Part shown: in pieces, positions 12,913-53,912 of the stretch
How the letters are laid out: every line of letters starts with the position of its first letter
Numbering within the stretch: position 1 is the first letter of the stretch
Assembly: GCF_026571515.1 (NCBI RefSeq)
Contig: NW_026857137.1
Location: forward strand, 186,001-250,000
Reading direction: 5' to 3'
Source of the DNA: Ruditapes philippinarum
Taxonomy: Eukaryota
Length of the DNA: 64,000 nucleotides
Program-made: the position numbers and the translations under genes
Notes under the pieces: model-generated
What the model was told of the DNA's origin: nothing
Databases searched by the model: none
What the model saw: the letters and a program-made list of their open reading frames with translations, nothing else

Positions 12913-13081
12913 GTAAAATTGAGTATAAAATTTTCAATTTTCAATACCTTCTCCGTGTAAAACACTATTATTACGATAATAGGACCCATACATGTATATG
13001 TAACTGTATTTTGAGTAAACGGATGACCGCTATAACGCCAGTCATTTTGATATGCAACACTTATACAAAGAAATAAATCAG

Positions 13082-13298: not shown

Positions 13299-13659
13299 AA
13301 TTTGTACATGTATTCCTTCCTTGCCGGTAAAGTCACTATGTTGCGAATTAGATCAAGGAATTATTGCATTCATACAACAGTTCCATATATGTATTACAAT
13401 GTGCATTCACATATAATGTTGTTGGGGAGCAAAATTTATGTTTCTTATAATATAGCTATTGTACGGTTTAGTAGTAACTTGCTGGTTTTATTACCAACAA
13501 ATAATATTTTCTCCTTTTTTATTGCATTATTAATCTAATAACTACAATGTATAAATCTGAGACTGATAGAAACTCTTGTCTTTCTGAATTTTGGTGACAA
13601 ACAAAAATCAGCTCAGTCAGATAAAATATATATTAATGTTAAATTTGATTACGTTTCAG

Positions 13660-13827
13660 ATTGAAAGAGACTGGAATTACGTTGCCATGGTTATGGATAG
13701 ACTGTTTCTGTTTATTTTTACAACGGCATGTATATGTGGTACAATCGGGATATTTCTGAATGCACCGTCAATACATGATCCCAGGATGCCGATGTCTAAA
13801 GATGACTTCAACTGTTCCAAGCGTTAA
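13660..13827 (+). CDS. Locus A exon 7 (M4 and C-terminus)
   Basis: [20 protein letters not shown]...FNCSKR-stop; exon lengths sum to 1545 nt = 514 aa + stop. Confidence 0.92.
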
Positions 13828-24954: not shown

Positions 24955-25191
24955 TAAGCCGTGTCACGACAAAACCAACATAGTGCGTTTGCGACCAGCA
25001 TGGATCCAGACCAGCCTGCGCATCCGCGCAGTCTGATCAGGATCCATGCTGTTCGCTATCAGTTTCTCTACTTGTCATATAGTTTTTAAGCGAACAGCAT
25101 GGATCCTGATCAGACTGCGCGGATGCGCAGGCTGGTCTGGGTCCATGCTGGTCGCAAACCCATTATGTTGGTTTTGTCGTGACACGGCTAA
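24955..25191. mobile_element. Fold-back MITE-like element, family 1, copy 2
   Basis: About 100-bp inverted arms around a short spacer, homologous to the copies at 8514 and 35428. Confidence 0.85.
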
Positions 25192-26197
25192 TATTATCAA
25201 GTATGCGAAAGATAATGGAAATATTTTAAACAGTAACTGTGTAACAAAATAATGAACTACATTTAATACATAGGAACTGCCCACACTAGACGGGAAGTAA
25301 TATTTATGTAAAATGATCCCACTATAAGGATGTAGCCGACCCATACAATCAGTTTGCAGACTGATAAATAAGAAACCGTTTATATACATGTGTCAGAAAA
25401 ATGACAGCAAGTTTATGATTAATAGTGATAGCGTGTCAATTGAATATAAGTAAAAGCTTTCCTTTATAAATTACAGATACATTTAAGATGCGATTCTCTC
25501 ATATTTGTTTTCAACAAAAATCTAAGAATTTTATTTCATCAGCTAAATTTCTGCATCCAAAAAAAGCAAATATTAAATGAAGATAAAAATCATTCTATAC
25601 TGTGCTATAAAAACAAATTACAATTATTATGATCCGCTTTATGTCTGAGGCAATTACTCTTATTTCAAATGAAATCGACAAAAATCGAATTTTGTAAGTA
25701 TTACTTAAATGTCAAATCATTTTAGATAAGATACTTTAAATGTCAATTTACATGATAATGAAATTTAAAGCGTAAAAGTTGCTATGATTTAAGGCTCAAT
25801 TTGTCCATGGAAATAAACAAGTTAAAGGAACGAACTCAAAGGTTATCTTACTTATTCGTCTGAAATTTACTAAAGTAAGTTTTTATGAAATGGCTAGGCA
25901 TACATAAAGCCATTTCAAAATCCGTTGATTAATGCTAAGGTAATACTAATTTGATAGAAAATATCAATAAGAAAATCAATATAAACTACTCATTATTGTT
26001 AACATTATATGATCATAAAGATAAGTTTCTTGGAGATTTCTATCAGTATCTATTTGTCATAGTGTATTTATATATTTATCTGTATAAACTTTACGGGATT
26101 AAATATCTATTTTCACATTGACTGCACATATAAAACATGAACTGTATATGAGCGCCCTTTAACTAACTCATGAAAAATCTTTTATTTCGTTTCTTTT

Positions 26198-26365
26198 CTA
26201 GCACAGGCCACCTTTTGCATTTTCGGCTGATAATGCCTCTCTATCGTCATAGATCGTAGGCGCTTGTAACAAAATTCCAAACGTCCCGATGAGCGATGCG
26301 GTGGTGAATACCCAGAAGAACATTCTATCCAGAACCATTGCAGCAAACTTCCAGTCTTCAATAAC
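26198..26365 (-). CDS. Locus B terminal exon 5b (M4 and C-terminus)
   Basis: ttttag|[55 protein letters not shown]-stop; not in the ORF track. Confidence 0.9.
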
Positions 26366-28238
26366 CTAAAATACGTTATGATAAACTGTAATGTTCATAT
26401 ATTTCCAGTGAAACAGAAATGTTTTGTAATATTATCTTCAACTGATAGTCCATATCAATTGATTGTGCTTTTAATGAACATACCTTATTTAACCTTTATT
26501 AAAAATGTTTAGAAAAAGAACTTAACTGTGTAAGACATATACAGGAGTTTCATAGATTACGCAATGATTTAATAAGTTAACGATATAACCTATTTTAGTA
26601 TCCTTTATAACGTTATACCCTGAGAATTGTTTATGGTTAAGTCAGTTATTACAACTAAATATGAGTTATGTTAGCGCTGGAAGAATCGTTTTCAATGCTC
26701 CAAATTTTTAATTAAACCAATGCTTTTTGAGAAATATAAGTCCTGTATTCACGAATACCTAGGTTTGAATCCTCGACACAAACAAATATTAAGTATTTAA
26801 GCACTCTAACATCTAGGCTGGCAGGATTATTAATACACATTTGCTTATAAGTAATCATATGCAATACTCAAAGCCCGCAATTCAGATACAGAAAATGGTT
26901 CTGAATACTTATTTAAATGCCTCAGGTTAATATTGCCAGGCAGTTCACCAACATATTACATTATTTTACTATATTTATGGGACAGCAAAAACACTACTCA
27001 ATATTTCAACATATTTTTCCTGCGGATTCCCTTAGCGGTAAACTTTGAATTACGCTTCGCCTCCGAATTCTATTTAACATTAGCATGTAAGCACGCTTGA
27101 TTGTAAGCGTAAATATGAGTTTAAAGATAAATATTTTAGTAAGTTTTCTAATGTTTTGCACTAGAAACAGAAATAATAATATTATTTCTAGTTTAAGTAC
27201 AACCAAAATAATTTCCAGTGTCTAATCACTCTGATGGCTAAGCTGACCTACAAATAAATGCGTGAAATAATCTAATTTGTGTATCAACTCGGCGATAATT
27301 ATCTCCGTTTATTTATAATCCTCCGTATCGTAATTGGACTTAGCATAATTCTTAGTTTATAAACAACTTAATTCATCATGTTCTTAATATATCTTTGTTT
27401 ATATAACAAGTTTATTTTTACGTATCCAGTAAGTGTAGCCAAAACCTGATGTTACTATTGTTTCAGTACTATCGTGGAATCGACCTTGTTCCATTGAGGA
27501 AAGTGTTAGAATGTGTTACGAATATTTGACGAATCTGAATTTAGTAAGTGCCAAAAACAATATTTTATCATTTATGAAGCATCGTAATGATAAACAAAAT
27601 ACATTTGCTAATTGTTAACCAGCAACATAAATAGCTATTTTGGAATTCGAGAAAGTATTACTACATTATTAACATTAATTCCCCATTTTACCTTTCTTTT
27701 GATCAGACCATACTCTTTTAGAACAATACACTACTTCAATTGGCGCCTACAATCAATCAGATTTTTTTGCAAGTGTTTTATTTTTCTGACATTGATTCTT
27801 GATTATTCGAGACTCGGGCTATGGTAGGTGAAAAAATAGTACGAGGCAATATGTCATTTGGAATGTACGTCAAAAACACTCGCATATAACGAAAGACTGA
27901 TCATTAATGACACAGCACCATTTAAATTTGTCTGGCCTTAACTTTTTGTAGACATTACCTAAAAAAACTATTGATATTTAAGTATAAACAATAAAGATAG
28001 AGTGCAGTCTTTAGGAAAGACTGCCTCACGATATGCTGTATTTCTTCTACATGACACTTTTGAAATTTATGAGAACTGCACAATGCAAGAAAGCAAACTC
28101 TTAAACGAGGAGATATATTTATGTTTTAAAATACACAACACATTAAACATATAAATATGGAAACAATTATATCAAGAAAATTTTAAATGTTGAAACACAA
28201 ATGTTTTCTGAAGTAAATATGTTTAGATAATTATATAC

Positions 28239-29217
28239 CGAAGAATAGTCATCTTCTTCTTTCAGATGATCGGAAATAAACTTAACATCTGATAGGACAT
28301 GTTCTATTGATTGAGGAAGTATGCTGTCACGCCGACCAGTCCCTGGTTCTTCATCGGAGCTTTGTGAAGCACGTTCGTATATGTGATTCTCGCCAGTTCG
28401 CACAAAGCTGACACCACTTCTTCTTATTGGGGAAATTTTAGAACTCACGCCATTACACTTGGACCGTTTGTGCTTTTTCATAATTGGTCGACGCATAAAT
28501 AATATTTTTGGTAGTATACGTAACAACGCAGTGCGAGTCCAGTTTGACATTTTATGCGTTGCAGGTGACCGGAAATGTATAGTAAGGATTAAAACTGTCA
28601 CAATAATAGATAATGTTACAAGAATCATAGTAAACAATAAGTATTTTCCTATCAACGGAATGACAATGGACGTTGGCGGAATGATTTCTGTCAGTAATAA
28701 GAAAAACACTGTTAAAGAAAGTAGTACGGATATACACAGTGTTATTTTCTCTTCACTATCTGACGGTAAATAAAACACAAGAACCGTCAGAAATGAAATT
28801 ACTGCGCATGGAAGGATGAGGTTCACTGTATGAAACAATGTCTTCCGTCTCATTGTGATGAAGAAAGTTAAATCAGGATACGGTTCAATACAGCATATGT
28901 ATATTTTGATACTTTTCTTTGCTGTCCCAGATAAAATATCCCATTCTACATTTTGATAAAATTCACTGAAGTCCATTCCATTTTCTATTACTTCAGTTGA
29001 ATCTTGGTCCTTAGCGCATACATGTACTAAATCAACTTCAAAACCATCGTATGTCCATGAACCAAATTTTAGTCCACATTTTTGAACATCAAAAGGGAAG
29101 AACTCTACGTTCATTATACAAGCGCTTTTGTAGACAGCAGGAGGTTCCCAAACTATTAAACCAGTATAAAATAAAGTTGCTTTTGTAAATAGTTGAACTT
29201 CGAAATGTCCGTCAGCA
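28239..29217 (-). CDS. Locus B exon 4b: alpha-type module
   Basis: ttttag|[14 protein letters not shown]...[15 protein letters not shown]...SWTYDG...[12 protein letters not shown]; M1-M3; TCG|GTATAT donor; 979 nt, phase 2 to 0. Confidence 0.93.
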
Positions 29218-31805
29218 CTAAAATAACAAAAATAAATTAACTTTTTAAAATAGTACTAACAAAAGTGCTTAAAAGTATCAATAATCTTCAAAAAAATATC
29301 ATGTTAGATATTTTCACTAACTTTACGATTACGCTAAATTAAATTCAATTCACTGCACAAAAAAGAGCAAGTATGTATAAATCTGAAACGCGCTAACAAT
29401 ATACAAACATATAATCTATATAACATATAACTGAAATCTTTAATTCAAATCAATTAAAGTAATTTAGTAAACTGTATTATTGACAGAATTGCATGCAGAC
29501 AACAGATCTAAGATATCTATCTATCTGGAATAGAAAGCACATATTAAGACAACATTCAAGCATGACTAAAGTAGTTGCTTTCAATAAGAAGTGCTTGTCT
29601 GAAGCGGATCATCCAATAACACTAAACATGAATAATTCACTCATAGGTCAATTTATTTGATTAAACTTTTCGTTAATATAGCATTCTCTGATTCAATGCA
29701 AAAATTAGTTTACTAAGCTATTTTTGCTGATCGTAAATATATATAAAACATTTCTTCTTCTGAAAAAAAAATCAAAGACATATAAAGAAAGTAAAAGAAA
29801 AGCTTCTTATTAAATAATGAGCTTGTTATGTCCAAACTTGCCACAGCTGTCAGTTTTATAGAATAAGAAGAAAAATCAACCGATAATTTCAGAGACTAAA
29901 TCTAATGTACGTAATAACTGTGATTATGGGCTACATTCTACTTCAATAGACAAGCAATATTTATAGTAAAGTATGATATTCTCTGAGGAGAACCTGTATA
30001 TATCTGTAAGTAAGTTATATATAATAAAACATTTCAAGCATAAAACGTCTATTCTATACCACAGTTCCATGAACGTTTAGAAATGTTACGATTTCGTAAG
30101 AAATGATATATTTAAGTCAAGATAGTTAATGGGTGCGTATACAAAATATGATCAAATTAAACAAGCAGCATGATCGGCTTTAGACTCAGGCACCATTACT
30201 TGTGCAAATGTTGACTTAAAGTCTTCACTTAAAATCACGTTGCATTTTAGATATAAGTGGCATTTATTGTCATAGTGCATTTAGTTTATCACATCTGATG
30301 TGAACAAGTAAACTGAAAAGAGCGGTATGCAATAAATGTAGCTGAAATGTAAAAATAGTTTAAATGCAACAATGTTTTAATTACAATATAAATTATGTTA
30401 TCAGCAGATGAAATATATCTGACATGGAACTATTCAGATGTAATATGTTGATTCTATTAGAAAATGCATTCCTTTATTTGTTCAGCAATTTTAGACCTAT
30501 ATAGACTGATCAATAATACTTAAACAGTGTATGGGCTTTGGTCTTCACATTAAATGAGTTCGTGCCGAAATAAAAATTGCTAATCATGGGAAATCCTCAT
30601 GATTATTTTGTTTGAATTGAATACGGCATTTTGTTGACACAGGTTTCAGGCATCAATTTATTTTCGATGTCGAATGAAAACCAGGAATGTCACAAATCTA
30701 TTGCATTTGACCATAGTATGCTGAAACAATCAAATATAATGTAGATTTTTTTTTCAGTTTTGTCAAACAACCTACATTAGGGTTCGAATTCTTAGACGAA
30801 AAAAACATACATTTTATTTCAACGGTCACTATAATATGTCCTAACAATTTTATGTCCTTACAACAAAAAGTGAAAGGAAACTTCGGAAATGCAGGTCTCT
30901 CTAGACCAAACACAAATTTCATACAAACATAATGGTGTTTTCGCGTTAGACAGTTCAGTAAAACTTAAGTAGAAAAGTATGTTGTATAAAGCATGTAATT
31001 TATCTTCGGAGTGCAAAGAGAAAACAAACAGTAAATAAAGTAGACGAAAACATCGTAGAAACGTTAATATCATTTGCAAAAGTAATGAATTGCTAATGTC
31101 AGAAACCAAATTTGTTTAATCAAAATGTCAATGCCAATCTTTCCTGTAAATCCAAGCATAAATTTCGTAAAGTCAATACTTTCTATTAAATTGTTACACT
31201 TTCTCTATAAAACCTGAAGGAAAGAAATCAGATTATATTTTTGTTCCTTTGACTTAAAATCTTAAATTTACAATTTGATTCAAACAAAAATATTTCTCAA
31301 ATTAGTGAAATAAAATACTTTAATATCATATATCCTGGAACAAAAGTCTAAAATAACCGAATCTCCCTTCAGCACGAGTTTCGGGATAATAGCAAGTGGC
31401 ATTTTATGACCCTGTATTTCTGTAGATAATTGTCAATCAAAAGGATATGACATAGACAATTACATTAGCAGTCCGTAGAAATGTTTTCCAAGCGCTAATA
31501 AGATTCTTTTATTCGGACAAGGGGTGAATTTCTGTCCCTGATAAGATGTAATATGAATTGGACATTATCATTGTTCTATAGTTGGATTATTTTGTGATGG
31601 TTTATGAAAAGAAATCATTACAGAGATGTGTTGGTTTCAAAGAATATCTCATGTTGCCTGGTTTCATTCGGTGCCAATCATTCACATCGTCACGCTCTTA
31701 TTCAAGGGACATAGGTAATACGCTATTAAAACTATCTTCAAAACATTCAATTGAACGGAGTCTTTATTGTGTATATTCTGTTAAAGGAATACTTCATAGA
31801 ACTTT

Positions 31806-31816
31806 TATCATTATTA

Positions 31817-31855
<39 letters not shown>

Positions 31856-31860
31856 ATTAT
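31806..31860. repeat. (ATT)n microsatellite
   Basis: Direct reading. Confidence 0.9.
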
Positions 31861-32346
31861 TTTTACGTGGTTTTGTCTGTCTCCTTTTAAAAATTTTCGT
31901 AGTTAATTTACATTATTTATTTGCCGAAAAAATAGACAGAGATAATAAAATAACCTTGGCACACATATAAAATAGACTTATGGGAAATTAAAAATGTACA
32001 GAAAATAAATAATTTTTGAGGTTGATTCGATTATACTTGAAGCTAAGCAAGAATATTTTTTTTTACCTTTTTTGCTAGGTTAGATGCGGTATAAAAAAAC
32101 ATATATCAGATCCCTCTAACGGTGATAGTACATAATGTTAACATTTGTAAGCTAATTTCGACCTCGGTTCACGCCTCGGTTCAAATTTTCTTTCTCGGAT
32201 TAACAATTCTAGCACCCTCAGAGGGTCCGATACTTGTATGATAATCAAACATTGCATGATTGCGTTATTCTCTGGTAGATATAGAAGCTCTATCGGACTA
32301 AATTATTTCTAAAAATCATTTTAAAATTTCACTTTCTTCCGTTTTA

Positions 32347-32643
32347 CTAATATTTTAAACGAATGTTTGTATTGAAGGTACAACAGTCATTATTATGCGT
32401 GCAAAGAACGTGAAATGCAACAAGTTCAAGACAGCAAGGTATAGATAATATTAGTATAAAATACATAAATGTATCATCCTTATATACCGGGTAACTTGTC
32501 ACAGGGGTGATGACATTTCGATTGTCATATAGTGTGGGTGCTTGAAGTATAATACCAAAAGTTCCAACAACGCAAGCTACTGTAAATATCCACAGAAACA
32601 GTCGATCTAACACCATAGCTACATACTTCCAATCTTCACTTAT
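32347..32643 (-). CDS. Locus B terminal exon 5a (M4 and long C-tail)
   Basis: ttacag|[20 protein letters not shown]...QAPTLYD...stop 32347; the 3' end is less certain than the 5' end. Confidence 0.85.
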
Positions 32644-33006
32644 CTGTAACATATCATTTCTTTATACATGGACATATATGGAAATAATTTTGATATATAA
32701 ATATTTCTATAAATATAAATAAATTTGTGTAGATATTTACTTATCTCTTGAGATAACTTCGTTAATGGTCAAACTATAAAGAAATATAATACGATTTATT
32801 TGTGACATGCAAGAAAGGTTCATCTTAAGATAACATTTCTTGCCTATAAATGATAGCAGAACATCCGTAAATTTTAAAACATAAATTTAATCTCTCCATT
32901 CGGAATGCAGCTTTTAAGATATTATCACAATTTCGATTCACATAAATAATACATACTGCGGTACTTATAAGGAGAATTCATACATACACGCAATAATACA
33001 ACATAC

Positions 33007-33961
33007 CGATGCTGAATAATCACCCTTCTTTAGATGTTCTGCGATGAATACTATACTGTCTATTGCCTCTTGTACATCTGGTGGAAGTTGCTGTTCTACT
33101 GTAGTACCATCCTCAGCTGGTCCCTGCCTAAGTCGTCTGCTTGTGTCGAACTCTAAATCATGTCTATTCACATACTGGTCTCTCATTTCTATACCATTAC
33201 ATGTCCTTACAATTGTTCTCGCAATTTTCTCGTGCTCAAGATTCGGTCTCCTCATCAAGAGCATTTTAGGCAAAATGTTTAAAAACACCCGCCGTACCCA
33301 TGGTGCCATAGTATGCGTTGATGGAGACCGGAAGTGCACATTTAATGTTATAACCGTCACTATGATTGACAAGGTAATCAGTATCATAGTAAAGAGCAGG
33401 TACTTGCCAATTAGCGGGACAACTATAGACGTGGGTGGAATTATCTCGGCGAGGAGCAGAAAAAAGAAGTTAAGTGAGAGCAGAATAGAGATACACAAGG
33501 TAATCTTCTCACAGCTGTCAGAGGGGAGATAAAATACCAGGATTGTCAAGCAAGAAATTGCAACAGAAGGAATAATTAAATTTACGGTATGAAATAATGT
33601 CTTTCGCCGAATTGTTACGTTGAATGTTATGTCAGGGGCATCTGTGTAGTTCAAGCTCTTTTCCGCAGTTACTTCTAGAACGTCCCATTCCCCGGATTCG
33701 TAGAAGCCCCGCAAATCGATGCCATTTTGAATAACTTCCTTCTTGTGTTTGTGTTTAGAACACTCATGTATAAGGTCCACCTGCGTGCCATCATATGTCC
33801 AAGAAGCAAATTTCATCGAGCAAAGCTGAATATCAAACGGGAAAAATTCGACTTCAATCGTGCATGAACTTTTGTAGATTGCGGGGGGCTCCCACACAAC
33901 ACCACCGCTATAGTTTAATGTTGCTTTTGTCATCAAAGTAACTTCGTACTGACCATCGGCA
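33007..33961 (-). CDS. Locus B exon 4a: non-alpha-type module (Cys-loop to cytoplasmic loop)
   Basis: tttcag|[14 protein letters not shown]...[15 protein letters not shown]...SWTYDG; loop [13 protein letters not shown] lacks CC; M1-M3 intact; TCG|GTATGT donor; 955 nt, phase 2 to 0. Confidence 0.93.
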
Positions 33962-34723
33962 CTGAAAGAGATCTTTCTATTTACTATAACCTGTATACAT
34001 ACTGAACCACAACCGAAAGAAATGAAAATAAAAAGAGCAACACCATGCGTGATTGGTATAAAACAGTTTATCCACAAATGTTGTCTATCTTCATTTGTAA
34101 TACTCCATTCTTTAAGTTGAGGTTTTTGTACAATTCAAACAAATAAATTACAGAAACAAAATATAAAAGCATTTCTTAATCACACCAAAATGCATTAAAG
34201 GGGTAAATGTGAAGCTGTTGTGACTGCAGTGTGTTCTCTACAATTGCTCTCACCCTATCCCAATACACGAGGAGTCACGTGACCCGTGATCCTAAGGGAT
34301 AGTAACCACCCGGTGTTGCCGGGGGCTTGTGATGATTATTGAAAATTGAAAGATACAAATAGCATTGTGTAGAATAACCTAGTAAATACAATACTGAAAA
34401 AGAGTAAAATTGCTACCTGAAAGAATACAAAGACATGTTGCAATTTATTACAATTTTGCAAGTTTTTACTCGTGAAAAGAAAATGATATGTTCTTAAATA
34501 TGTTTGTTTTGTTTAATGATAAATAAATTATTTGTTGAAGCCGTTAATTAAAGCTAAATTTGACTTCATGTGTAAATGTCTGTAAAATTATAACATAATG
34601 TGGTTATAAAATCAGCTTAGCTTTACAAAAAACAGTTTTTCTCAATATAATGATATTACTTTGTGAAAATGGCATTGTTGATAAAATGGTCATGGTAAAA
34701 GAACAAAATAAAAGTAAACTTAC

Positions 34724-34833
34724 TTATTGAACAGCACGATGTCTGGCAACCATATATTTTCTGATGGTAGCTCAAGTGTTTTGATACCTCCATATTCTTT
34801 CGGATCCCATCTTAAACTCACGTCAATCCATTC
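34724..34833 (-). CDS. Locus B alternative exon 3b (110 nt, loop A with Phe)
   Basis: [36 protein letters not shown]; cag acceptor, AA|GTAAGT donor; not in the ORF track. Confidence 0.9.
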
Positions 34834-35277
34834 CTGGTAGATACAAACAGTTCTTCTATAATACCAAGCTGCCTACTGCGTTTAGAAAAAAAACCTACGC
34901 GGAGCATGCCACAAGGAGCAAGAATGTCTCATCTACATTATGTATAGATAAAACAGTTTCATGCATTTGATTTGCGGTACATTTACTTAATATATTTAAC
35001 ATCCATGCTCACATTGACCACAATTACAACAAATTGCCACATTCTTATAACAATAATTTAAGACTTATTACGTCATAGAGGTGAACAAAAACACATGCTA
35101 GCACTAGAAAATACATCAATTTTCTAAGTATTTGTCGACTACATCAAATACTGCACCAATACGAATGATGAATAAAAAAAGGAAACGTGATCCAGACCAT
35201 CGAAAAATGCACATAGGCTTTTGCAACACACTTTACTACAGCAGCACGTTCATGCCTTTGCTAGATAAACAACATAC

Positions 35278-35387
35278 TTATTGTACAAAACAATATCGGG
35301 CAACCAAATCAGTTTGGAAGGAATATACAGCCTGTCCACACCGCCATATTTATGAGGGTCCCATCTTAAGTTATAGTCGTACCATTC
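35278..35387 (-). CDS. Locus B alternative exon 3a (110 nt, loop A with Tyr)
   Basis: [36 protein letters not shown]; poly-pyrimidine/aag acceptor, AA|GTATGT donor. Confidence 0.9.
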
Positions 35388-35427
35388 CTTCGTAAGCAAG
35401 AAAAAAACAAAACGATCAGCAAACGAC

Positions 35428-35669
35428 ATATGAGCCGCGTCATGACAAAACCAACGAAATGCGTTTGCGACCAGCATGGATCCAGACCAGCCTGCGCGTC
35501 CGCAAAGTCTGATCAGGATCAAGCTGTTAGCTATCAGTTTCTCTACTTGTAATAGAGTTTGTAAGCGAACAGCATGGATCCTGATCAGACTGCGCGAACG
35601 CGCAGGCTGGTCTGGATCCATGCTGGTCGCAAACCCATTATGTTGGTTTTGTCATGACACGGCTCATAT
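35428..35669. mobile_element. Fold-back MITE-like element, family 1, copy 3
   Basis: ATATGAGCCGCGTCATGAC...GTCATGACACGGCTCATAT. Confidence 0.85.
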
Positions 35670-38600
35670 TATATTTAATACAGGGCATTGGATATAGTTA
35701 CACAAGCATAACACGAAATTGTTGACCTTCAAAGTTTTATATATGCCACCATTTAAACAATATAAAAATAGACTGTCTTAGGACTTTGTCAATGGATTTT
35801 TTAGTTAGCACAACATCTGAATGTACTTCGATTACATGATATAAATGTTTTAAACTAAAATATACATATCGTCAGCTAGTGAACCTTAAGTTAGCCAGAG
35901 CATTATTCAGTACTGTTTCAACTTAACGACGGAAATGCGGTCAAAACACCCTTTATTATTGAATGGTGACTCATCTTTGTCTAAAGTTATTTCGGTTTTA
36001 ATTTTTTATTTAGTTTTTTTTTCTCTTTTTATATGGTTTTATTGCAAAAGTATTATTTTGGTAATAAGTATTCGTTAGATGAAGTAGCATCAAATCATAG
36101 ATGTTTTAAGTCAATTAGACAAAAATGGTAAGTTACATATCATGTCTAAAGGTTAGTAGAAGCCAAATCAACAAACATTTTATAACATATCAATCATATT
36201 TCACGTGGCATTGACCACATATCAATCATATTTATAAATACATTTGCTCTAGTTGATATCGGCTTGTTTTCTGAAACAGCCCAGAAGGCAATGGCAAAGA
36301 TTTGTGTTGCATATCGTAAGAGATAATATACTTTACTTTTGTTTACACTACATCAGAATTAAGATCAACATTGTGTAATTAACCATTTCTCCGCTGACGT
36401 TTTGTGTAATCGACTGTTTTGAACAATTTGGACAGATATACCAAACAAAATACAAAATAAACCCAGTGCTTTTTTTTGCTAAAATTTAAGGGACATTTTT
36501 GTTTGCATATAATCTAATCAAGTATCCTTACCGCTGTGCGACAGGTGCGATAAAGCAGGAAACATTTCAATAGTTTCTTTTTCCAATTGCCGCCTGCTAG
36601 TCATAATCAGAATTGATTGTTAAGCAGTATCATGTAGATGTTTCATATAAAAAACTTAAAACGAACTTGTAATTTAATTGCAATTGCAACCATTGCATTT
36701 TTTTCCGCAAATGTGGAATCGCATCGTTTATTCAAAAAATTAAACGGTGAAAATTCGTATGGAAAATGGAAATGTTACTAGAAAACCCAGACTCAGTTCT
36801 CGTAAGTTTTCCCAAAATTACAAAGTATCAACGTAATTTGCATTTAGGAAATCGAAAAGCACGGAAATAAATTGATGTTTATACAGTGTATCATTGAATC
36901 AGATCAGTCATTTGATAGAGACATCAAACTTCAATTACTTCTTTCTGGTATGCATTGCATACATAAAAGGAACAAGAAATTGTTTTATTTGATATATGAC
37001 TTATCTATTTGAGAATACACGGTCATGACTTAATTTTTTTTCACCATGAAAATACAAGCTGGGACATAGTTTGCCCTTTACATATGTTTACGGTTCTCTC
37101 CTTTTTTCAAGTTTTTACCTTACTATGATTGTACATAATTAATATTTATTTACCGGTTATCAATATTTTTGTATTTCAGCGAAGAAGAAACATGCAATAT
37201 TACTAATACTTTCGATGATATTGGTGTCATACGGGGTCATGACGCTTGCTAGAACGCCAGGCATGAGTAAACACTGTCCGTCCATCAAGTATCAGTCATT
37301 TCATCCTTTCAAACAATCATCAATCAAAATGACTCTATCTTGTTTGCAAAACATCAGCATCAACATTCATTGTGGATAAAATGTCTTGAATTGAACAAGT
37401 ACAGATGGGCTTGTATTTATCTATATAGCTCCTGTTTGGTATATCTTCTCCTCAGTTTATCAGTACTTTTAAAATTGACCAATCATTTTATTTATAAGAT
37501 GGTCATCGTAAATGAAATGAATTAAGCTTAAACACGTTCATTTGATTCTTAAAAAATTTGCAAAGAAAATTAACAGGCGCTAGATACACATGTACATTAC
37601 TTTCTTTAAACTTGTTATTAATTTTAATTTCAATTATTGATAAATAATCTTAATGCGTTTTTCAAAATTAAATAGGTTTTATCTTTTCTTATTAGAATAA
37701 TGTTTCAAGAATAAGATTGTCTTAAAAGTATATGGATTTAATTTATTTTTAGTGAATACTGTAATATGCATGACACACATATTAAATATTTGAAATAAGA
37801 TAATATGACAGGCAAAGGTTTAGTTTATGAGAACAAGCACTGACGAATTTAAAAAAAATGTTTCGTTTTAAACCCAATTAAAAATGAAGACTAGAAGCTA
37901 AATCCAAGCAAGCCCGTATTTTCATACAAACTTCCGATATTGATATACGATATAAATCGTGTATTTAGAAAAGGTAAGTTATTATTTTAATACATTTATG
38001 CAAAAGCTGTTAACGTGCATACCCTTCCAAATGAAGGCAGACAGAAGATGAAAAATAAGCATTTACTTCAAAGGCAAGCATCATAGATTGTGGTATATAG
38101 AAGATTAATTTTTACGCGTCTGTATTTTGATCATAAACAAATTAATTTGCCAGTTTGATATATACAATGATAACTTGCAGAATCATTGAGCATAAATATT
38201 CATATGAGCAGACAGGAAACAAAAATGGAAAATAGTCTGGTAAATCTGTTATAAATAACACATTATATTGTTAAAATAACTGGCCCTTAAACTGTTTATA
38301 ACATACCAAATGTATAAATCATACAGTTATGTAAGAAGCAAATACGTTAAAAGATAACTACATAAAATATCTAATGATAAAGTGAACGATTCACAAGCTT
38401 TTTAGCCCTTAAGTTACATTTTCCAGATTAACATAGCACATGGAGGTACCAACCAAGCCTGTTTGCATTTGGCCGACTGGTATCGTCGGGATGTTGCCGT
38501 CGGTTGGTTCTATGAACGTGCTGATAGAAGTAGTCAATGTTTAAATATTACAAATCTTGATTAAAACGATGACTTCATGCAAGAAACTGATATTAATCAG

Positions 38601-40533
38601 AATAATCTGTCGTCATAGTTTGCTCCCAAACCGAATAGAAATCTTAAAATTTCTAGCCTGGTAAAGTAGTTGAAATGTGAAAGTTTTTATTGTATTTATG
38701 CGCCGTCAATGATACAATAATAAAACCAGATATTACATTATATACAGTCATCATAGGAAGCTATAGACCGTATGCTTGATTGGTTAACGCAATTATTTTA
38801 TATCAAAGAAAATTTGCATTGCTCGGAAATCAAACTCACGCAAGCGAACTATTTTATATGCATAACGCATTCTGATTACAATCCATCTTTTCGATCATAG
38901 CCGGGAATAACAACTACTTAATCATAAATAGGATTTGTTTGATTCATTGTCTGCCATATTCCATGTAGTTTATTATACCGATAAAAAGGACGAACTATCA
39001 TGTGCTATTTCACTAAATTTAATAGTCTGTCTTTATAAGGTTTGTTTGGCATTCAAATTTTGATCAATATTTTCAATAAATCACACGATATCTGTGACAT
39101 AACATGTCACATTTCATATTTCAATTATGTGAATGTCGTTTAAATTAAAGAAAACCAAAACAAGACAAATAAAAGGAACGGAAATTTTACAAAAAGTAAA
39201 TGCCATCTTTTTTTAGCCCGGTAATTTATTTATAAACAGTTCAATGCTAATTAGGTTTATGATATTTTTTTGTAGCTACTGCATTGACTTTGAAGAGGCG
39301 CTGAATCTATTATTAAAACATTTTTATATAAAAGAAATTATACTGTTAGGAAATGAATTAAAACTGAATTGATTTAAAATCAATATTTGTAATATGAAAC
39401 CATATGAAACCAACAATTAAAATTCAGTTTTTTTTTTAAATTAATGTACCATTGAAAACGGAACATTTGCATGTTAATGTATCTATAATCATATTTTCAG
39501 TTAATTAAAATTTTCATCTATCAATACATTTTTACGGAAATTTGAAAGTCTAAACAACATTTCGGTTTTGTTAATTAAGAAAATTATTCATCAACTTAAA
39601 AGAATCTTTTTAGATTAAATAAAAATATCTGTTTTTATTCGACTGCACAAAAACAGCAAAACATGCAAATATTATCTAATAGAACTTCAATTAAAATCGT
39701 CATTCTTCGCAACATCAATAAATAAGATAAAATGACTTCTTTTATTCCCAGAAATTTAAAGTTTGAATTTAATGTGCTGTTAGTGCACAAAGCCCCAACG
39801 AATTACACCAATGTCTTTTTGCCTCTTACATCCGTAGCAAGCAATAAAGACTTTTACATTGGCAATATGTCCTCTGATAACACTGACTGGGTTTATTTAA
39901 AGACACTTGACTTTTATTGCAATATTCGGAATGAGTTTCAGGAAATAACGGTGTCTCTATATATCTCGTGTGCATATAATGGTATAAAACTATATAAAAC
40001 GTTTAAACTAATGATACGTAATGATATTTAATGATAATTGTTCTTCCTATCTTATTTTGAAATTAATTTTTGGCCGATCAGAAAACAAGTTATTTCAATT
40101 CAAAACATGTAATTTAAAACATTTCTTCTAAATTATAGATCAATTATATATATCTTGGTCTGCTTAAATCCTAACAGAAATTCACAAATTTTGGTAAAAT
40201 ATATATATATAAAAACAATCACATATTTTAATATAAAAGGTTGGTCAAGGTCACATTTGCAAGCATTCATGTCGTTGCGAAACTCGCAAACTTAGTCAGT
40301 TGCTTTATCGTTAAAGTGAATTTAATACTTTGGATATTTTCAATCGTCTCCAATACTTACTTCTCAGAAATGTTTAAAAAGAGGAAACCTCTTTTTAAAA
40401 CATCTCTGAGAAGTAAGTATTGGTTTCACATTTAAAGATAGGTTTAACTTTAAAATACAATAAAATTAAAAGATAATCAAAATGTTTTATTAAATCAATG
40501 AATCAAAGTTTTCATAGGGAAATAGGTAATTAC

Positions 40534-40578
40534 CTGTCTAATCCATACATTTGTCGTCATTACTTGATTTAACTCATC
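40534..40578 (-). CDS. Locus B shared exon 2 (45-nt loop D exon)
   Basis: ttttcag|DELNQVMTTNVWIRQ|GTAATT; not in the ORF track. Confidence 0.9.
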
Positions 40579-41407
40579 CTGAAAATAAATCGAAATAAAA
40601 AAATAATTAAAATAACTTAAATAGATATATCAATCTTATTTTGTACATAAAGGATTATGGCATGGTAAGTAACTATGCATATTCAATGTAGTTATATATG
40701 ACATTTTGTTATTTTCTAATACCTCTCGCCCTATATATATTCGTAACTCATAGTCTCACTATTGCTCGAATATTCTAGCTATAAGTGGGTAGAAATGTAA
40801 AAAGATAATGCTTAATTTTAAAATAAAAGGGAAGCGAATTTCAAACATATTCTTATGTTGACTCCGTTTTCCGTGTATGTTCATACTTTATCATCACGAT
40901 ATATCCACGGACGTTTATCATCTATTGAACTATAAAATTTGTTACAAGAAAATGAGCGATTAGGGGCAACAGTTTATTAACATGACGTCTTTTGGATAAG
41001 ACTGTAATTGAATATAAATGTCTAAAAAGTCATTTGTTACTCTCTTGTTATTTATGTTACATGCAATGTCTGACTGATAACTGTGATTTTATCGAAAGAT
41101 CATAATGACAAATGGAGGCCATATTGGTGGTCTCAGGGGCTTTAACTCTGGGTATGTATATTGGAACGTTATCGTTAAGCCATATAATATATAGAAAAAT
41201 ATATATAAAATACTTTCAATAGGGGTACAAGCCAGATTTACAAGGCAATTGAAATGTTGACATCTCAGTGTAACTTTTTTTTAAAGTTGAATATACATTG
41301 GTTGCACCATAGTCAACACGTATGATAAAACAACAACAAACAACAACATAAAACATAAAACGAAAAACACGAATGGTGTGCACCATATACACATCTGTCA
41401 GATTTTG

Positions 41408-46648: not shown

Positions 46649-46855
46649 CACGTCAATTATCTGTGAAAGTCGGATTCCCATTTTCACAGTCAGTGGGCGG
46701 TCTGTGTTATTACCGACTGGTCGTATTAGTTTGTTGTATTTATTCTGAATTAAAAGATCATGATATAATCGTTTAGCATCGTCATTCGCATAACACTCCA
46801 TTGCCAGTAACACAGCGCCGAAAATACACAGGTGTGCTAATACCGTAAGCGCCAT
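46649..46855 (-). CDS. Locus B nAChR shared exon 1 (signal peptide to beta1 strand)
   Basis: [35 protein letters not shown]...[30 protein letters not shown]; GTAAGT donor, phase 0. Confidence 0.93.
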
Positions 46856-50656: not shown

Positions 50657-51485
50657 CTGAATTGATTGACAACTTGTGTTTACTTTAGGACTTGTGCCTC
50701 TCATTCCAATACTAAATAACATACATGTATTACAACTTAATTTTGTATAAAGAGACATCTTTATGAAATCTACCTATCTAACATTTTGTGGTCAAGGTCA
50801 ACAGGCCATATAGTAAATGTGCATAGACATAGGTTCTTCATTTTATCTGTTTACATGCACCTTCATATATACTCATACTCATCTTGGTTAAACTGAGAGA
50901 ACTTTATATGTCACTTTCAGTCAATGAGTTTAAGATTTTGAATTTACTGGCCCGAATTCCAGTTTTGAATTTATTCTACTAAATAATTAACAAAATTTTC
51001 TTAAATTTACACTGGCCTGAACTTATATACACTGGCCATCGGGCACCGGGCCAGTGTTGACTTCACTTTTATTTTGATGTTCGCTGAAGTCTCTTCAGCT
51101 AACAGAACTGTCATTTTTACATTTAAACACACCCCTTTAAAAAAAATACGAAGCGAGTCGCTACTAGCTTTTTTAAAAGCTTACCTTGTATATTCATATT
51201 ATAGTTACACGTAAATGTATAATATCTAAATAGTGGAAATATGGATTAAACAAAGCTGTGGTGGAACATATGATTCAAAACATGTTCAATATGATGAGAT
51301 ATTTCCACGGCGAATACTGTCATCAGTCTTTGTCGTCATAGTATGTGTAAGTTATCTGCGAAAGGGTAAATATCAAAATGAAAATATCTCTGTTTATTCT
51401 CATTTATTGAAACAAGTATTTAATTTAGTAAAAAAATTAACCCGGAAGCTCGGTAGATTTCATAGAGTACTACATTGTTCCTAAA

Positions 51486-53912
51486 GGTAGCACTCCACAG
51501 TTAATTTCAAGTTTCTGCCGTCAATGTCCTACAAGCAATACGTCTAATAATTCTGATACCAAACTACACAACCTGGAAAAAGAAAACACATTTTGTTGAG
51601 AACATATATGACATAAGATTGCAAATCTACAAAGAAATTATCCCATCTGCAATAGGCAGGCAGTCAAAAAATTTGCAATTCATTCCGTTGAAGCCCAAAA
51701 TCTACAGTGGCCCGAGACCCAAAACAACACATTTCGACCCTCTGGCAAAAAATATCTGCAAATATACAGGCTAAAGGAACACCGTCTCTGCTTTAGCAAC
51801 TCCCTATACATGCAAAATATCACAAAGAAACTAGTCCTCAACCTTGTAGATTTTTTGCTACTGCTAAAAGTTTGTACCCCCCTGTAAAATGACTTCTTTT
51901 TACCGTGCATGCTGTATAAAAGCAATGTTTACAAAAAATGGCGGCCTTGACATTCATAATCAACAGCATGTGATTTCTGGCCATGTTTTCGAATTTGCCA
52001 GTGATCATATTAGATGTCACAAAAACAAATTTTATGCTGAAAATGCATTTTAAAGACAACCAGTCATTTAAATCCAGAATATTCACTATATCCAAGAAAT
52101 CCTCCCTGGCCATTCGAAGCTGTGGCTTACATTACTGTGGTGTGCTACCTTAAGGGGCATCATAACATTGATTGATGACCTTTATATGGACTTTTTCTAC
52201 AAATTCATGCATATTTCAATAAACAAAATGAAAATTTTTGCTGGGAATTGTTTGTTTTTTCATTATCTATGCCTTAAATGAACTATGCTGTCCATCCCAT
52301 TTTCAGCCCTCGGCAAGCCTTTTTCAGTACATGTAGAATAAGAAAGTATTCCCAATGTAAAGTGTACACAATCTGGTTCTTATACCATCTATACAATCAA
52401 AATGTTCAAATATGTCCTTATAACATCTAATATGAAAGAAATATTCAACAAATTGGCATACAGTTTAAGTATATATGGCTTCATGCTTCATATAAGGCAA
52501 AAATACAACAGATTATGTTCTTGCCGGACACCAAAATGTGCTATGTTTTTTTCAATCTTGCACAGTATAAAATCCAATTAGCATGCACAATTTTCATAAA
52601 GGTTTTACGTAAAGTCAAATTCAAAGAGACACAGCACTTATCATGGCCCTCTGAGCATTGTAGATCTATCAATGTTGGTCGCCCAGGGCATCGAAATTCA
52701 CCAAGCAACACCCTGAAAACCAAATTCTCCGACTATTCAATCTCGCATGCCCAACTCCAAAATGGTCAAATTCTAACCCGAAAACCTAGCTTTAACATCC
52801 ATTTGCACCTGTAAATGATTTCAAGCAAACATATCCCTTCGCACAAATATTTCGCATCACATGGAACATGCCCGATGGCCATATTCTACATGTACAGCTG
52901 AAAAGCAATAAAAACATGCCTTTTTCCACCAAAAAAGTTTGGAAAATCAGGAAAATATCAACCGAATAGCTCTATATGTGAATATTTTCACTCTCCCACA
53001 GCTGTCTCTCCTGGAATAAGTAGTCATTATGACTTAAGACACATGGCAGACACAGCACTTTTCATACATTTCACATTTAGGTTTTCATGTATTTGAGTTA
53101 CCTCCCCTTTTTAAACCTAACTTTCAAGCTCTGTGATAAATATTTTTTATGAAATTTCACCATCATTTTGGTCAGTGTGCATGGTAGAGCCTTTACACAA
53201 AGTTAAATGCGAAAAAACAAGGTTTGAAAAAAAATCATTTTACCTTAAGGTAGCACTCCACAGTTAATTTCAAGTTTCTGCCGTCAATGTCCTACAAGCA
53301 ATACGTCTAATAATTCTGATACCAAACTACACAACCTGGAAAAAGAAAACACATTTTGTTGAGAACATATATGACATAAGATTGCAAATCTACAAAGAAA
53401 TTATCCCATCTGCAATAGGCAGGCAGTCAAAAAATTTGCAATTCATTCCGTTGAAGCCCAAAATCTACAGTGGCCCGAGACCCAAAACAACACATTTCGA
53501 CCCTCTGGCAAAAAATATCTGCAAATATACAGGCTAAAGGAACACCGTCTCTGCTTTAGCAACTCCCTATACATGCAAAATATCACAAAGAAACTAGTCC
53601 TCAACCTTGTAGATTTTTTGCTACTGCTAAAAGTTTGTACCCCCCTGTAAAATGACTTCTTTTTACCGTGCATGCTGTATAAAAGCAATGTTTACAAAAA
53701 ATGGCGGCCTTGACATTCATAATCAACAGCATGTGATTTCTGGCCATGTTTTCGAATTTGCCAGTGATCATATTAGATGTCACAAAAACAAATTTTATGC
53801 TGAAAATGCATTTTAAAGACAACCAGTCATTTAAATCCAGAATATTCACTATATCCAAGAAATCCTCCCTGGCCATTCGAAGCTGTGGCTTACATTACTG
53901 TGGTGTGCTACC
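51486..53912. mobile_element. Composite non-autonomous element: two 664-bp direct repeats, each with its own TIRs, around a 1.09-kb core (KolobokP-like)
   Basis: 51486-52149 matches 53249-53912 (offset 1763); each reads GGTAGCACTCCACAGT...ACTGTGGTGTGCTACC; TTAA at both inner junctions. Confidence 0.85.

What the first reader, a model, noticed from the sequence alone, without database searches (positions are those of the whole stretch)
34724..35387. Mutually exclusive loop-A exons toggle the ligand-binding Tyr to Phe
Seen: 3a ends WLPDIVLYN and 3b ends WLPDIVLFN. Both are 110 nt (phase 0 to 2), so including both or neither shifts the frame. The 444-nt intron between them is too long for steric exclusion. 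Known: this Tyr (Torpedo alpha Y93) belongs to the principal-face aromatic box; the beta-type locus C in this window also has Phe here. Inference: 3a is the partner of alpha module 4b and 3b of non-alpha module 4a, while mixed products (3b+4b) would be alpha subunits with altered agonist affinity.
Basis: partly seen in the sequence, partly recalled or inferred. Interest (0 to 1): 0.78.

Follow-up and report, generated by a model that had tools for sequence, protein, structure and literature searches.

The report
Clam nicotinic receptor alternative exons
Two neighbouring alternative copies of one small exon in a Manila clam nicotinic-receptor gene are real and belong to an exon pair shared across molluscs, but in this clam each copy is tied to its own copy of the rest of the gene, so one gene appears to make two different receptor subunits.

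Summary
On the minus strand, 35387-35278 (3a, ..WLPDIVLYN) and 34833-34724 (3b, ..WLPDIVLFN) are 110-nt AG/GT-bounded paralogous exons, 444 nt apart.

Every window exon, translated on its own, matches two RefSeq isoforms of one Ruditapes philippinarum gene exactly. X1 is ex1-ex2-3a-4b-5b (alpha, YICC). X2 is ex1-ex2-3b-4a-5a (no Cys pair). So the exclusivity and the 3a/4b and 3b/4a coupling are already in public annotation.

- Each body has its own TM4 exon. The order is 3a,3b,4a,5a,4b,5b, so the 3b-4a-5a block is nested.
- 5a has no stop. RNA reads join it to 4b, giving Cys-stop, so the alpha body serves as 3'UTR of the non-alpha mRNA.
- The exon pair is old. Bivalves, gastropods and octopus have the same A (Tyr) and B (mostly Phe) exons, both joined there to a single alpha body.

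Only heterodont clams have the duplicated body. In them no mixed product appears among 13 full-length proteins.

Use of 3a in this clam rests on a gene model and on conservation, not on reads. The 3a-3b intron holds five GCAUG motifs, also noted by this scan (s1-810657). I found no paper describing any of this.

The parts
46649..46855 (-). Exon 1, shared: start codon, signal peptide and the first 69 residues (MALTVLAHL...SQIIDV); donor gtaagt
   Evidence: tblastn. The translation is an exact substring at residue 1 of both P0265 and P0258.
40534..40578 (-). Exon 2, shared, 45 nt (DELNQVMTTNVWIRQ); holds the loop-D Trp; ends in phase 0
   Evidence: Exact match at residue 70 of both isoforms.
35428..35669 (.). 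Hairpin-forming repeated element (arms 35428-35520 and 35577-35669, 93 nt, 92% complementary). It ends 41 nt upstream of the 3a acceptor. Other copies sit near 8514-8704 and 24984-25146.
   Evidence: the repeat finder I1; shared 14-mers. Probably a mobile element. Any role in splicing is untested.
35278..35387 (-). Exon 3a (A-type loop-A exon, ..WLPDIVLYN), 110 nt; used in the alpha isoform X1
   Evidence: Exact match at residue 85 of P0265 only. Zero depth in RNA runs X23 and X24.
34834..35277 (-). 444-nt intron between 3a and 3b, with five GCAUG motifs on the transcript strand (first bases at 35255, 35098, 35008, 34964, 34909; one of them is UGCAUG)
   Evidence: 11.3 per kb against 0-2.75 per kb in the six other introns. 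1 of 1272 sliding 444-nt windows of the 64 kb reaches 5, and it is this one. 0 of 5000 shuffles reach 5.
34724..34833 (-). Exon 3b (B-type loop-A exon, ..WLPDIVLFN), 110 nt; used in the non-alpha isoform X2
   Evidence: Exact match at residue 85 of P0258 only. RNA run X24 has mean depth 0.61 in the 34630-34829 bin, 0.04 in 34830-35029 and 0 in 34430-34629.
33007..33961 (-). Exon 4a, 955 nt: non-alpha body (loop E, Cys-loop, loop B, a loop C without the Cys pair: [14 protein letters not shown]1-TM3, cytoplasmic loop)
   Evidence: Exact match at residue 122 of P0258. X24 depth up to 2.8.
32488..32643 (-). Exon 5a, 156 nt: TM4 of the non-alpha body. It has no stop codon; donor CCG|gtatat, phase 0.
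   Evidence: Five X24 reads continue from 32488 into the first 30 nt of exon 4b.
28239..29217 (-). Exon 4b, 979 nt: alpha body (loop [18 protein letters not shown]1-TM3, loop). In the non-alpha mRNA it is read out of frame as TGC TGA (Cys-stop) and then serves as 3'UTR.
   Evidence: Exact match at residue 122 of P0265. Stop at nt 4 of 4b after 5a. Junction reads.
26198..26365 (-). Exon 5b, 168 nt including the TAG stop: TM4 of the alpha body
   Evidence: Exact match at residue 448 of P0265.

Best explanation
This is one Manila clam nicotinic-receptor gene on the minus strand, from about 46855 to 26198. It has shared exons 1 and 2, followed by a binary choice.

- Route A: exon 2 joins 3a, and 3a joins 4b across a 6.06-kb intron that holds 3b, 4a and 5a. 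4b then joins 5b. The product is a 502-aa alpha subunit with loop-A Tyr, loop-B Trp and loop-C Y-x-C-C...Y.
- Route B: exon 2 joins 3b, then 4a, 5a, 4b and 5b in turn. The 5a/4b junction reads TGC TGA. The product is a 492-aa non-alpha subunit with loop-A Phe and no Cys pair. The whole alpha body then lies in the 3'UTR.

Shown:
- the exons, their phases and splice sites;
- the exact identity of each exon translation to the two RefSeq isoforms;
- the 5a-to-4b junction in RNA reads;
- that 3a+3b together, or neither, gives an early stop.

Inferred:
- that route A is used in this clam (gene model plus conservation only);
- that double inclusion is removed by the frameshift;
- that the GCAUG cluster between 3a and 3b (an Rbfox-type site, downstream of 3a and upstream of 3b) favours 3a and represses 3b;
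- that the short introns inside 3b-4a-5a make that block behave as one unit.

History:
- The A/B exon pair is ancient in molluscs. There both exons feed one alpha body, so Tyr/Phe is a true toggle.
- Heterodont clams later duplicated the body and TM4 exons. The upstream copy lost its loop-C cysteines and became tied to exon B.
For: - Gene map by tblastn with six relatives.
- Each window exon, translated separately, is an exact substring of P0265 (X1: ex1, ex2, 3a, 4b, 5b) or P0258 (X2: ex1, ex2, 3b, 4a). Their accessions are consecutive and both are named as isoforms of one gene.
- RNA run X24: 21 reads laid, with depth on 3b, 4a and 5a. A 5-read loose end at 32488 has a consensus (agreement 1) that matches window 29188-29217 uniquely. 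That is the first 30 nt of 4b, ending at its acceptor.
- Frame bookkeeping: 3a+3b gives a stop at nt 14 of 3b, and 5a-4b gives a stop at nt 4 of 4b.
- Relatives of the non-alpha isoform end in ..YPC, as this junction predicts (P0257, P0002, P0004).
- Coupling: 11 of 11 non-alpha bodies carry B exons and 2 of 2 alpha bodies carry A exons.
- Body tree of 38 rows: a 4a clade of 9 rows (support 100/100) and a 4b clade of 11 rows (100/100). Each clade holds Ruditapes, Mactra, Mya and Dreissena.
- Exon tree of 42 rows: 20 B exons and 17 A exons fall on opposite sides of one starred branch (100/97).
- In 14 of 15 equal-length same-species isoform pairs, the differences are confined to this exon.
- GCAUG enrichment in the 3a-3b intron.
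- Only one 4b copy was found in the whole assembly.
Against: - No read covers 3a in the two true RNA runs. X23 laid 2 reads and X24 21, and only about 6 and 12 in 100 of those runs were read.
- No joint reached the 3-read listing threshold, so 3b-4a, 4a-5a and any 3a junction are not shown directly.
- Among heterodonts, only two full-length alpha-form proteins exist in what I fetched (P0265 and P0123), and both are predicted models.
- 4b-type bodies evolve faster than 4a-type bodies (72% against 84% identity to Mya).
- The coupling count includes several isoforms and paralogues of Mya and the window's own two models, so it is not 13 independent events.
- The GCAUG cluster is a motif count in one species.
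- A stop codon about 975 nt upstream of the last exon junction would mark X2 for nonsense-mediated decay in mammals (recalled rule), yet X2 is the form seen in the reads.
Confidence: 0.7

Rival explanations
1. Exon choice and body choice are independent. All four in-frame products (3a+4b, 3b+4a, 3a+4a, 3b+4b) are made, and annotation simply shows two of them. The Tyr/Phe toggle would then also act inside the alpha subunit, as the reader proposed for mixed products.
For: All four combinations keep the frame. B exon plus alpha body is the normal arrangement in scallops, oysters, abalone, Biomphalaria, Aplysia and octopus. No sequence feature that would enforce coupling was found.
Against: 0 of 13 heterodont full-length proteins are mixed. 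Three of the 13 come from roughly 2-kb contigs of sequencing runs that hold the whole coding sequence without introns (P0002, P0008, P0009). The number is small and the rows are not independent.
Confidence: 0.15
2. Route A is dead or marginal in this clam. Exons 4b and 5b now serve only as the 3'UTR of the non-alpha mRNA, and 3a is a skipped relic. The X1 protein would be a prediction without a real transcript.
For: There are no reads on 3a in X23 or X24, while 3b, 4a, 5a and the 5a-4b junction are covered. In Mercenaria only non-alpha isoforms turned up among the hits. 4b-type bodies diverge faster than 4a-type bodies.
Against: Eleven 4b-type bodies from Ruditapes, Mactra, Mya, Dreissena and unnamed contigs keep open frames, the Cys-loop, Y-x-C-C and near-identical TM1-TM3. 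That is not expected of a UTR. 3a keeps 28 of 36 residues with the Mya A exon (my count), and all 17 A exons keep the Tyr. The window's 3a, 4b and 5b have intact frames and splice sites.
Confidence: 0.1
3. These are two separate genes that merely interleave, each with its own promoter and first exons. The shared 5' end in RefSeq would be a modelling artefact.
For: In Mya the alpha model (P0123) and the non-alpha models (P0011, P0266) have slightly different N-termini. Mercenaria X2 (P0001) and Dreissena X2 (P0271) start from alternative upstream sequence.
Against: For locus B the tblastn found one exon-1 match and one exon-2 match, both upstream of 3a and before the next locus. The 444-nt gap between 3a and 3b cannot hold them. 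The Mya differences fit two tandem copies of the whole locus: two 4a and two 4b sequences, and one GenBank model (P0269) that reads through both bodies.
Confidence: 0.05

Closest known systems
The orthologous molluscan gene: RefSeq isoform pairs in Pecten, Mizuhopecten, Argopecten, Ostrea, Mytilus, Haliotis, Patella, Biomphalaria, Gigantopelta, Pomacea and Octopus, plus Aplysia cDNAs AAL78648 ('alpha 1') and AAL78649 ('alpha 2')
   Same: It is the same 36-residue exon, with the same two types. A reads ..[20 protein letters not shown] and B reads ..E(V/L)P....FN. The two isoforms have equal length, and the loop-A residue is Tyr in A and mostly Phe in B.
   Different: Those species have a single alpha body (Y-x-C-C) joined to either exon. 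The clam and other heterodonts have two bodies, with the B exon tied to the one lacking the Cys pair.
Insect nAChR mutually exclusive exons (alpha6 exons 3a/3b and 8a-c; alpha4 exons 4/4')
   Same: These are duplicated, mutually exclusive exons inside the ligand-binding domain of a nicotinic subunit, conserved over long times. Sources: PMC2045683 passages; PMC1919356 and PMC5111602 as search listing and abstract starts only.
   Different: They are different exons. The alpha4 alternatives differ 'near the Cys-loop', which corresponds to the start of the clam's body exon. Models carrying both insect copies matched that part twice. No switch of the whole subunit body is described there.
Nematode avr-14 (gbr-2), giving GluCl-alpha3A and GluCl-alpha3B
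   Same: One gene makes two Cys-loop receptor subunits with a common N-terminus and alternative C-terminal channel-forming parts (PMC8841521 passages).
   Different: It is a glutamate-gated chloride channel. According to those passages the variants differ in the C-terminal region, the ion channel and the intracellular domain. In the clam only 84 residues are shared, loops A, E, B, F and C all switch, and the downstream body doubles as 3'UTR.
Rbfox-regulated mutually exclusive exons, such as C. elegans egl-15 exons 5A/5B (recalled, not read here)
   Same: A cluster of (U)GCAUG lies in the intron between two mutually exclusive exons.
   Different: Only the motif count is shown here. No binding data, no test of conservation, and no Rbfox gene was confirmed in this assembly (uninformative).

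Membership tests
Nicotinic-type Cys-loop receptor subunit (Pfam PF02931 + PF02932) | Ligand-binding domain followed by a four-helix membrane domain | tested here: met
   4a: PF02931 E 3e-31 and PF02932 E 1e-54. 4b: E 2e-30 and 2e-56. 3a and 3b each: PF02931 E 4e-12. The best solved relative of X1 is human alpha4, E 5e-135.
Alpha-type nicotinic subunit | Adjacent cysteines in loop C (Y-x-C-C) | tested here: met
   Met by the 4b body ([15 protein letters not shown]). Not met by the 4a body ([12 protein letters not shown]). The gene therefore encodes one alpha and one non-alpha product.
Mutually exclusive exon pair | Adjacent homologous exons of equal length and phase with their own splice sites | tested here: met
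   110 nt each, phase 0 to 2, AG/GT sites, 72 of 110 nt identical.
Mutually exclusive exon pair | Mature mRNAs contain exactly one of the two | tested here: inconclusive
   Both RefSeq isoforms carry exactly one. Including both or neither gives an early stop. The reads were too few to show any exon-3 junction.
Mutually exclusive exon pair | Both exons are used | tested here: inconclusive
   3b is covered by X24 reads with sharp exon edges, and it is in X2. 3a appears only in model X1 and has no reads in X23 or X24. Both types occur as cDNAs in Aplysia.
Molluscan A/B loop-A exon pair (grouping made in this report) | 3a groups with A exons and 3b with B exons of other molluscs | tested here: met
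   One starred branch (100/97) separates 17 A from 20 B exons. There are only 36 columns, and the single Lingula exon falls on the B side on a long branch.
Insect alpha4 exon 4/4' pair | Same exon position | tested here: not met
   The insect alternatives lie near the Cys-loop (PMC2045683), downstream of the loop-A exon.
Steric or U2/U12 incompatibility mechanisms of mutual exclusion | A very short intron between the exons, or one U12-type site | tested here: not met
   The intron is 444 nt. Both donors are gtatgt/gtaagt and both acceptors are ordinary AG sites. The thresholds are recalled from general knowledge.
Docking/selector RNA pairing (Dscam-type) | Competing complementary intron segments | tested here: inconclusive
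   Of 62 inverted pairs in 26000-41000, the 25 listed are A+T-rich chance-like matches or the repeat-element hairpins. No comparative DNA was available.
Rbfox-regulated exon | Clustered (U)GCAUG next to the regulated exon | tested here: met
   5 in 444 nt; 0 of 5000 shuffles and 1 of 1272 windows reach 5.
Rbfox-regulated exon | Motifs conserved in relatives and bound by an Rbfox protein | not testable with these tools
   Relatives' DNA could not be fetched. The PF12414 search of the genome was blank, and its controls were blank too.

The most novel reading that the evidence does not exclude
A single clam gene encodes both partners of a heteromeric nicotinic receptor. An ancient loop-A exon switch, perhaps read by an Rbfox-type factor at the GCAUG cluster, decides between an agonist-binding alpha subunit and a structural non-alpha subunit. 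The alpha body is carried as 3'UTR in the non-alpha mRNA. Under this reading, splicing alone would set the alpha to non-alpha ratio, and hence receptor stoichiometry, in each cell.
Probability: 0.3. Interest if true: 0.7.

Novelty: new variant of a known kind. Interest (0 to 1): 0.55.

Why it matters
Mutually exclusive exons in Cys-loop receptor genes are known from insects and nematodes. Three things stand out here.

First, the loop-A pair is shared by bivalves, gastropods and cephalopods. It swaps a binding-pocket Tyr for Phe in 17 of 20 B exons. It sits in public annotation and in old Aplysia cDNAs named as two subunits, yet I found no paper describing it.

Second, heterodont clams show how such a switch can be captured by a later duplication, turning one gene into a two-subunit gene.

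Third, coding exons of one isoform are reused as the 3'UTR of the other. That raises a testable question about mRNA surveillance in molluscs.

The practical point is that counts of nicotinic subunits in bivalve genomes that go by gene number miss such products.

Tried and rejected
As a result, conservation of the intron motifs and of the exon order outside this genome is untested.
- RNA runs X21 and X22 are labelled RNA-Seq. They cover introns at roughly whole-genome depth, and 7 of their 8 loose ends abut a GATC. I treated them as proximity-ligation-like DNA and drew nothing from them.
- No joint passed the listing threshold in any run.
- Steric exclusion and U12 incompatibility were rejected (444-nt intron, ordinary GT-AG sites).
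- A docking/selector search gave only A+T-rich chance pairs and a repeat-element hairpin.
- Homology with the insect alpha4 exon 4/4' pair was rejected, because that is a different exon.
- The insect models that topped one search scored high because they carry two copies of the part next to the Cys-loop, not of the loop-A exon.
- The PF12414 (Fox-1_C) search of the genome was blank, and so were its controls, so it is uninformative.
- Literature: four searches and passages of PMC6896357 ('splic' occurs once, in the reference list) gave no description of the molluscan exon pair or of the two-body gene. Subscription papers and all supplementary files were not visible, and gene-structure supplements of PMC6896357 might bear on this.
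- Torpedo numbering (W86, Y93), the Rbfox position rule, egl-15, the 50-nt NMD rule and Lansdell and Millar 2000 are recalled. They were not read here.
- The spliced model was searched exon by exon. Full-length comparisons used database proteins only.
Full report
OBSERVATION. The gene lies on the minus strand. Read that way, 35387-35278 and 34833-34724 are two 110-nt exons. Their acceptors are cgaag|GAA and accag|GAA, and their donors are TAA|gtatgt and TAA|gtaagt. They translate to [36 protein letters not shown] and [36 protein letters not shown]. They share 72 of 110 nt and 23 of 36 residues (my count). Each alone matches positions 56-91 of Pfam PF02931. The intron between them is 444 nt. 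The description is correct, and so is the remark on locus C (..IWRPDVVLFN at 60946-60788, with no Cys pair in loop C).

WHOLE GENE. I searched the two large downstream exons separately and sent no joined model to any search. tblastn with six of the hits mapped the locus, and reading the splice sites refined it:
- exon 1: 46855-46649
- exon 2: 40578-40534 (45 nt)
- 3a: 35387-35278
- 3b: 34833-34724
- 4a: 33961-33007 (955 nt; loop C reads [12 protein letters not shown], no Cys pair)
- 5a: 32643-32488 (156 nt; TM4)
- 4b: 29217-28239 (979 nt; loop C reads [15 protein letters not shown])
- 5b: 26365-26198 (TM4 and the stop)

With them the order is 3a, 3b, 4a, 5a, 4b, 5b. The block 3b-4a-5a is therefore nested between 3a and the alpha body.

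IDENTITY WITH PUBLIC ANNOTATION. Cluster look-ups showed two Ruditapes philippinarum RefSeq proteins with consecutive accessions, both named as isoforms of one gene. X1 is P0265 (502 aa) and X2 is P0258 (492 aa). Each window exon, translated on its own, is an exact substring. Exons 1 and 2 occur in both isoforms. 3a, 4b and 5b occur only in X1. 3b and 4a occur only in X2. In that call 5a failed to match only because I had started it one codon too early. Read from 32643, it gives the ISEDWKY...TSYP of P0258. So the window is Manila clam, as earlier notes of this scan also say. Both the mutual exclusivity and the 3a/4b and 3b/4a pairing are already in the public gene models. Whether RNA supports those models I cannot see.

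RNA. Of the four runs laid on 29430-35429, X21 and X22 behave like proximity-ligation DNA. They show intron coverage at about genome depth, and 7 of their 8 loose ends sit at a GATC. I ignored them. X23 gave 2 reads. X24 gave 21 reads, with about 12 in 100 of the run read. Depth in X24:
- up to 2.8 on 4a;
- coverage of 5a;
- 0.61 in the bin holding 3b, with 0 and 0.04 in the flanking intron bins;
- 0 in the bin holding 3a.

No joint reached the 3-read threshold.

One result is clear. Five X24 reads run on from 32488 into letters whose consensus (agreement 1) matches the window once, at 29188-29217. That is the first 30 nt of 4b, ending exactly at its acceptor. Exon 5a has no stop and ends CCG|gtatat in phase 0, and 4b begins TGCTGAC. 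The junction therefore reads Cys-stop. This explains why X2 and its relatives end in ..YPC (P0258, P0257, P0002, P0004). The non-alpha mRNA thus carries the whole alpha body, 4b and 5b, as 3'UTR. Use of 3a in this clam is not shown by reads.

COUPLING. Among the proteins fetched, 28 have the non-alpha body by a TM2 signature:
- 10 carry an upstream exon 3, and all 10 are B-type;
- 15 have no upstream sequence;
- 3 have upstream sequence that is not exon 3.

P0008, which the signature missed, is also B plus non-alpha, making 11 of 11.

Twelve proteins have the alpha body:
- 2 carry an upstream exon 3, both A-type (P0265 and Mya P0123);
- 8 have no upstream sequence;
- 2 have other upstream sequence.

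No mixed product was seen. One GenBank Mya model (P0269, 892 aa) reads through both bodies in series. These rows are not independent. Four are Mya isoforms or paralogues, and two are the window's own gene. All four exon-body combinations would stay in frame, so the coupling cannot come from the reading frame.

AGE OF THE EXON PAIR. Other molluscs show two exon types at this position. Cluster look-ups and sequence comparison gave 15 same-species isoform pairs of equal length. In 14 of them all differences (8 to 17 residues) lie within a span of at most 35 residues that coincides with this exon. The 14 pairs are Pecten, Mizuhopecten, Argopecten, Ostrea, two Mytilus, two Haliotis, Patella, two Biomphalaria, Gigantopelta, Pomacea and the nemertean Lineus. 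The fifteenth is the Aplysia cDNA pair, with 22 differences between residues 9 and 379. It has an A exon in AAL78648 ('alpha 1') and a B exon in AAL78649 ('alpha 2'), and NCBI lists the latter sequence as isoform X1 of the alpha 1 gene. Octopus has an A and a B isoform of 548 and 547 aa.

All these species join both exons to one body carrying Y-x-C-C. Mytilus has DDVCC instead.

A tree of the 36-residue exons (42 rows) puts 20 B exons and 17 A exons on opposite sides of one starred branch (100/97). With only 36 columns the inner forks are mostly open. The single Lingula exon sits on the B side on a long branch, and both Lineus exons fall with A, so the nemertean pair looks independent.

The loop-A residue is Tyr in 17 of 17 A exons. 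In the 20 B exons it is Phe in 17, Tyr in 2 (Mytilus, Patella) and Asp in 1 (Potamilus).

AGE OF THE BODY DUPLICATION. A tree of the bodies (38 rows, 397 columns) gives a 4a clade of 9 rows (100/100) and a 4b clade of 11 rows (100/100). Each clade contains Ruditapes, Mactra, Mya and Dreissena. Both clades have long stems (0.47 and 0.65). Unionids, scallops, oysters, mussels, gastropods and octopus have one body each and lie outside both clades in an unresolved comb. The duplication therefore predates the split of these heterodont lineages. Where it sits relative to other bivalves is open. 4b-type bodies diverge faster than 4a-type (72% against 84% identity to Mya). They nevertheless keep open frames and near-identical TM1-TM3, which argues that they are translated. 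The assembly holds only one 4b copy at E 1e-60 or better, though only 123 of 759 candidates were scored.

HOW THE CHOICE MIGHT BE MADE.
- Including both exons puts a stop at nt 14 of 3b.
- Skipping both puts one at nt 52 of 4a or nt 4 of 4b.
- The 444-nt intron and the ordinary GT-AG sites exclude steric and U12-type mechanisms.
- A search for competing RNA pairings found nothing convincing. It did find a 93-nt, 92% complementary hairpin of a repeated element that ends 41 nt upstream of the 3a acceptor.
- The 3a-3b intron holds five GCAUG on the transcript strand. That is 11.3 per kb against 0-2.75 per kb in the six other introns. Only this place reaches five among 1272 sliding windows, and 0 of 5000 shuffles do.
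- By the recalled position rule for Rbfox proteins, such a cluster would promote the upstream exon (3a) and repress the downstream one (3b).
- 3b also has the poorest pyrimidine tract of the acceptors.
- How 3a would then skip 4a and 5a as well is unexplained.

THE RESIDUE. X1 aligns to human alpha4 over residues 38-370 (E 5e-135), with [15 protein letters not shown] against liwrpdivlynnadg. The equivalence to Torpedo alpha Y93 rests on the W-x-P-D-x-x-L-Y spacing and on recalled numbering. Passages of PMC4621750 place alphaY93 in the five-residue aromatic core of the muscle receptor. They say that a Phe substitution keeps the ring but removes the side chain's H bonds. X2 keeps the loop-B Trp (FASWTYDG) but lacks the Cys pair and the second loop-C Tyr. 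Its Phe therefore sits on a face that is unlikely to bind agonist.

COMPARISON AND NOVELTY.
- The closest known thing is the same exon pair in other molluscs, which is annotated but, as far as four searches show, undescribed.
- Insect alpha6 and alpha4 have mutually exclusive exons elsewhere in the domain.
- Nematode avr-14 makes two subunits with a shared N-terminus and alternative channel parts.
- New relative to these are the nested two-body layout, the capture of exon B by a non-alpha body, and the reuse of coding exons as 3'UTR.

I rate it a new variant of a known kind, interest 0.55. The wider picture is more interesting than the original claim. Its key functional link, expression of the 3a-4b form in this species, remains unshown.

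Noticed in passing
window 35428-35669; also about 8514-8704 and 24984-25146: A repeated element forms a 93-nt, 92% complementary hairpin. One copy ends 41 nt upstream of the 3a acceptor, where it could affect branch-point access.
   Followed up: partly
runs X21 and X22 on window 29430-35429: These two runs are labelled RNA-Seq. They cover introns at about whole-genome depth, and 7 of their 8 loose ends sit at GATC sites. They look like proximity-ligation DNA libraries.
   Followed up: partly
window 51484-52149 and 53247-53912: An exact direct repeat of at least 666 nt, 1763 nt apart, lies in the stretch with the window's strongest negative GC skew (52001-54000, -0.20). It carries identical 42-aa open frames.
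   Followed up: no
window 10801-13815 (+) and 61979-58158 (-): Two further nicotinic subunit genes flank the locus. Locus A is alpha-type ([16 protein letters not shown], loop-A Tyr). Locus C is non-alpha (no Cys pair, loop-A Phe). Each has a single exon 3 and a single body. More family members lie on the same contig (G000:C5624 near 122880 and 184093).
   Followed up: partly
proteins P0011, P0266, P0123, P0269 (Mya arenaria): Mya seems to carry two tandem copies of the whole two-body locus (two 4a and two 4b sequences). Its non-alpha forms end differently (..YKCLPPHDQ...), so the 5a-to-4b Cys-stop junction may not hold there. One GenBank model fuses both bodies into an 892-aa protein.
   Followed up: partly
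protein P0094 (unnamed contig of a sequencing run): This 4b+5b open frame is preceded by ..NIIR|ADG. The Arg fits a CG|T junction like the 5a-4b splice (the alpha form would give Asn). The contig may be a non-alpha mRNA of another clam carrying the alpha body as 3'UTR.
   Followed up: no
proteins P0342 and P0033 (Lineus longissimus): A nemertean orthologue also has two equal-length isoforms that differ only in this exon (8 residues). Both are A-like and both keep the Tyr, so this is probably an independent duplication.
   Followed up: partly
window 32230-32487: RNA run X24 has a little depth (0.45) in the intron just downstream of 5a. Some transcripts may retain it or end there, which would extend the reading frame past ..SYP.
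   Followed up: no
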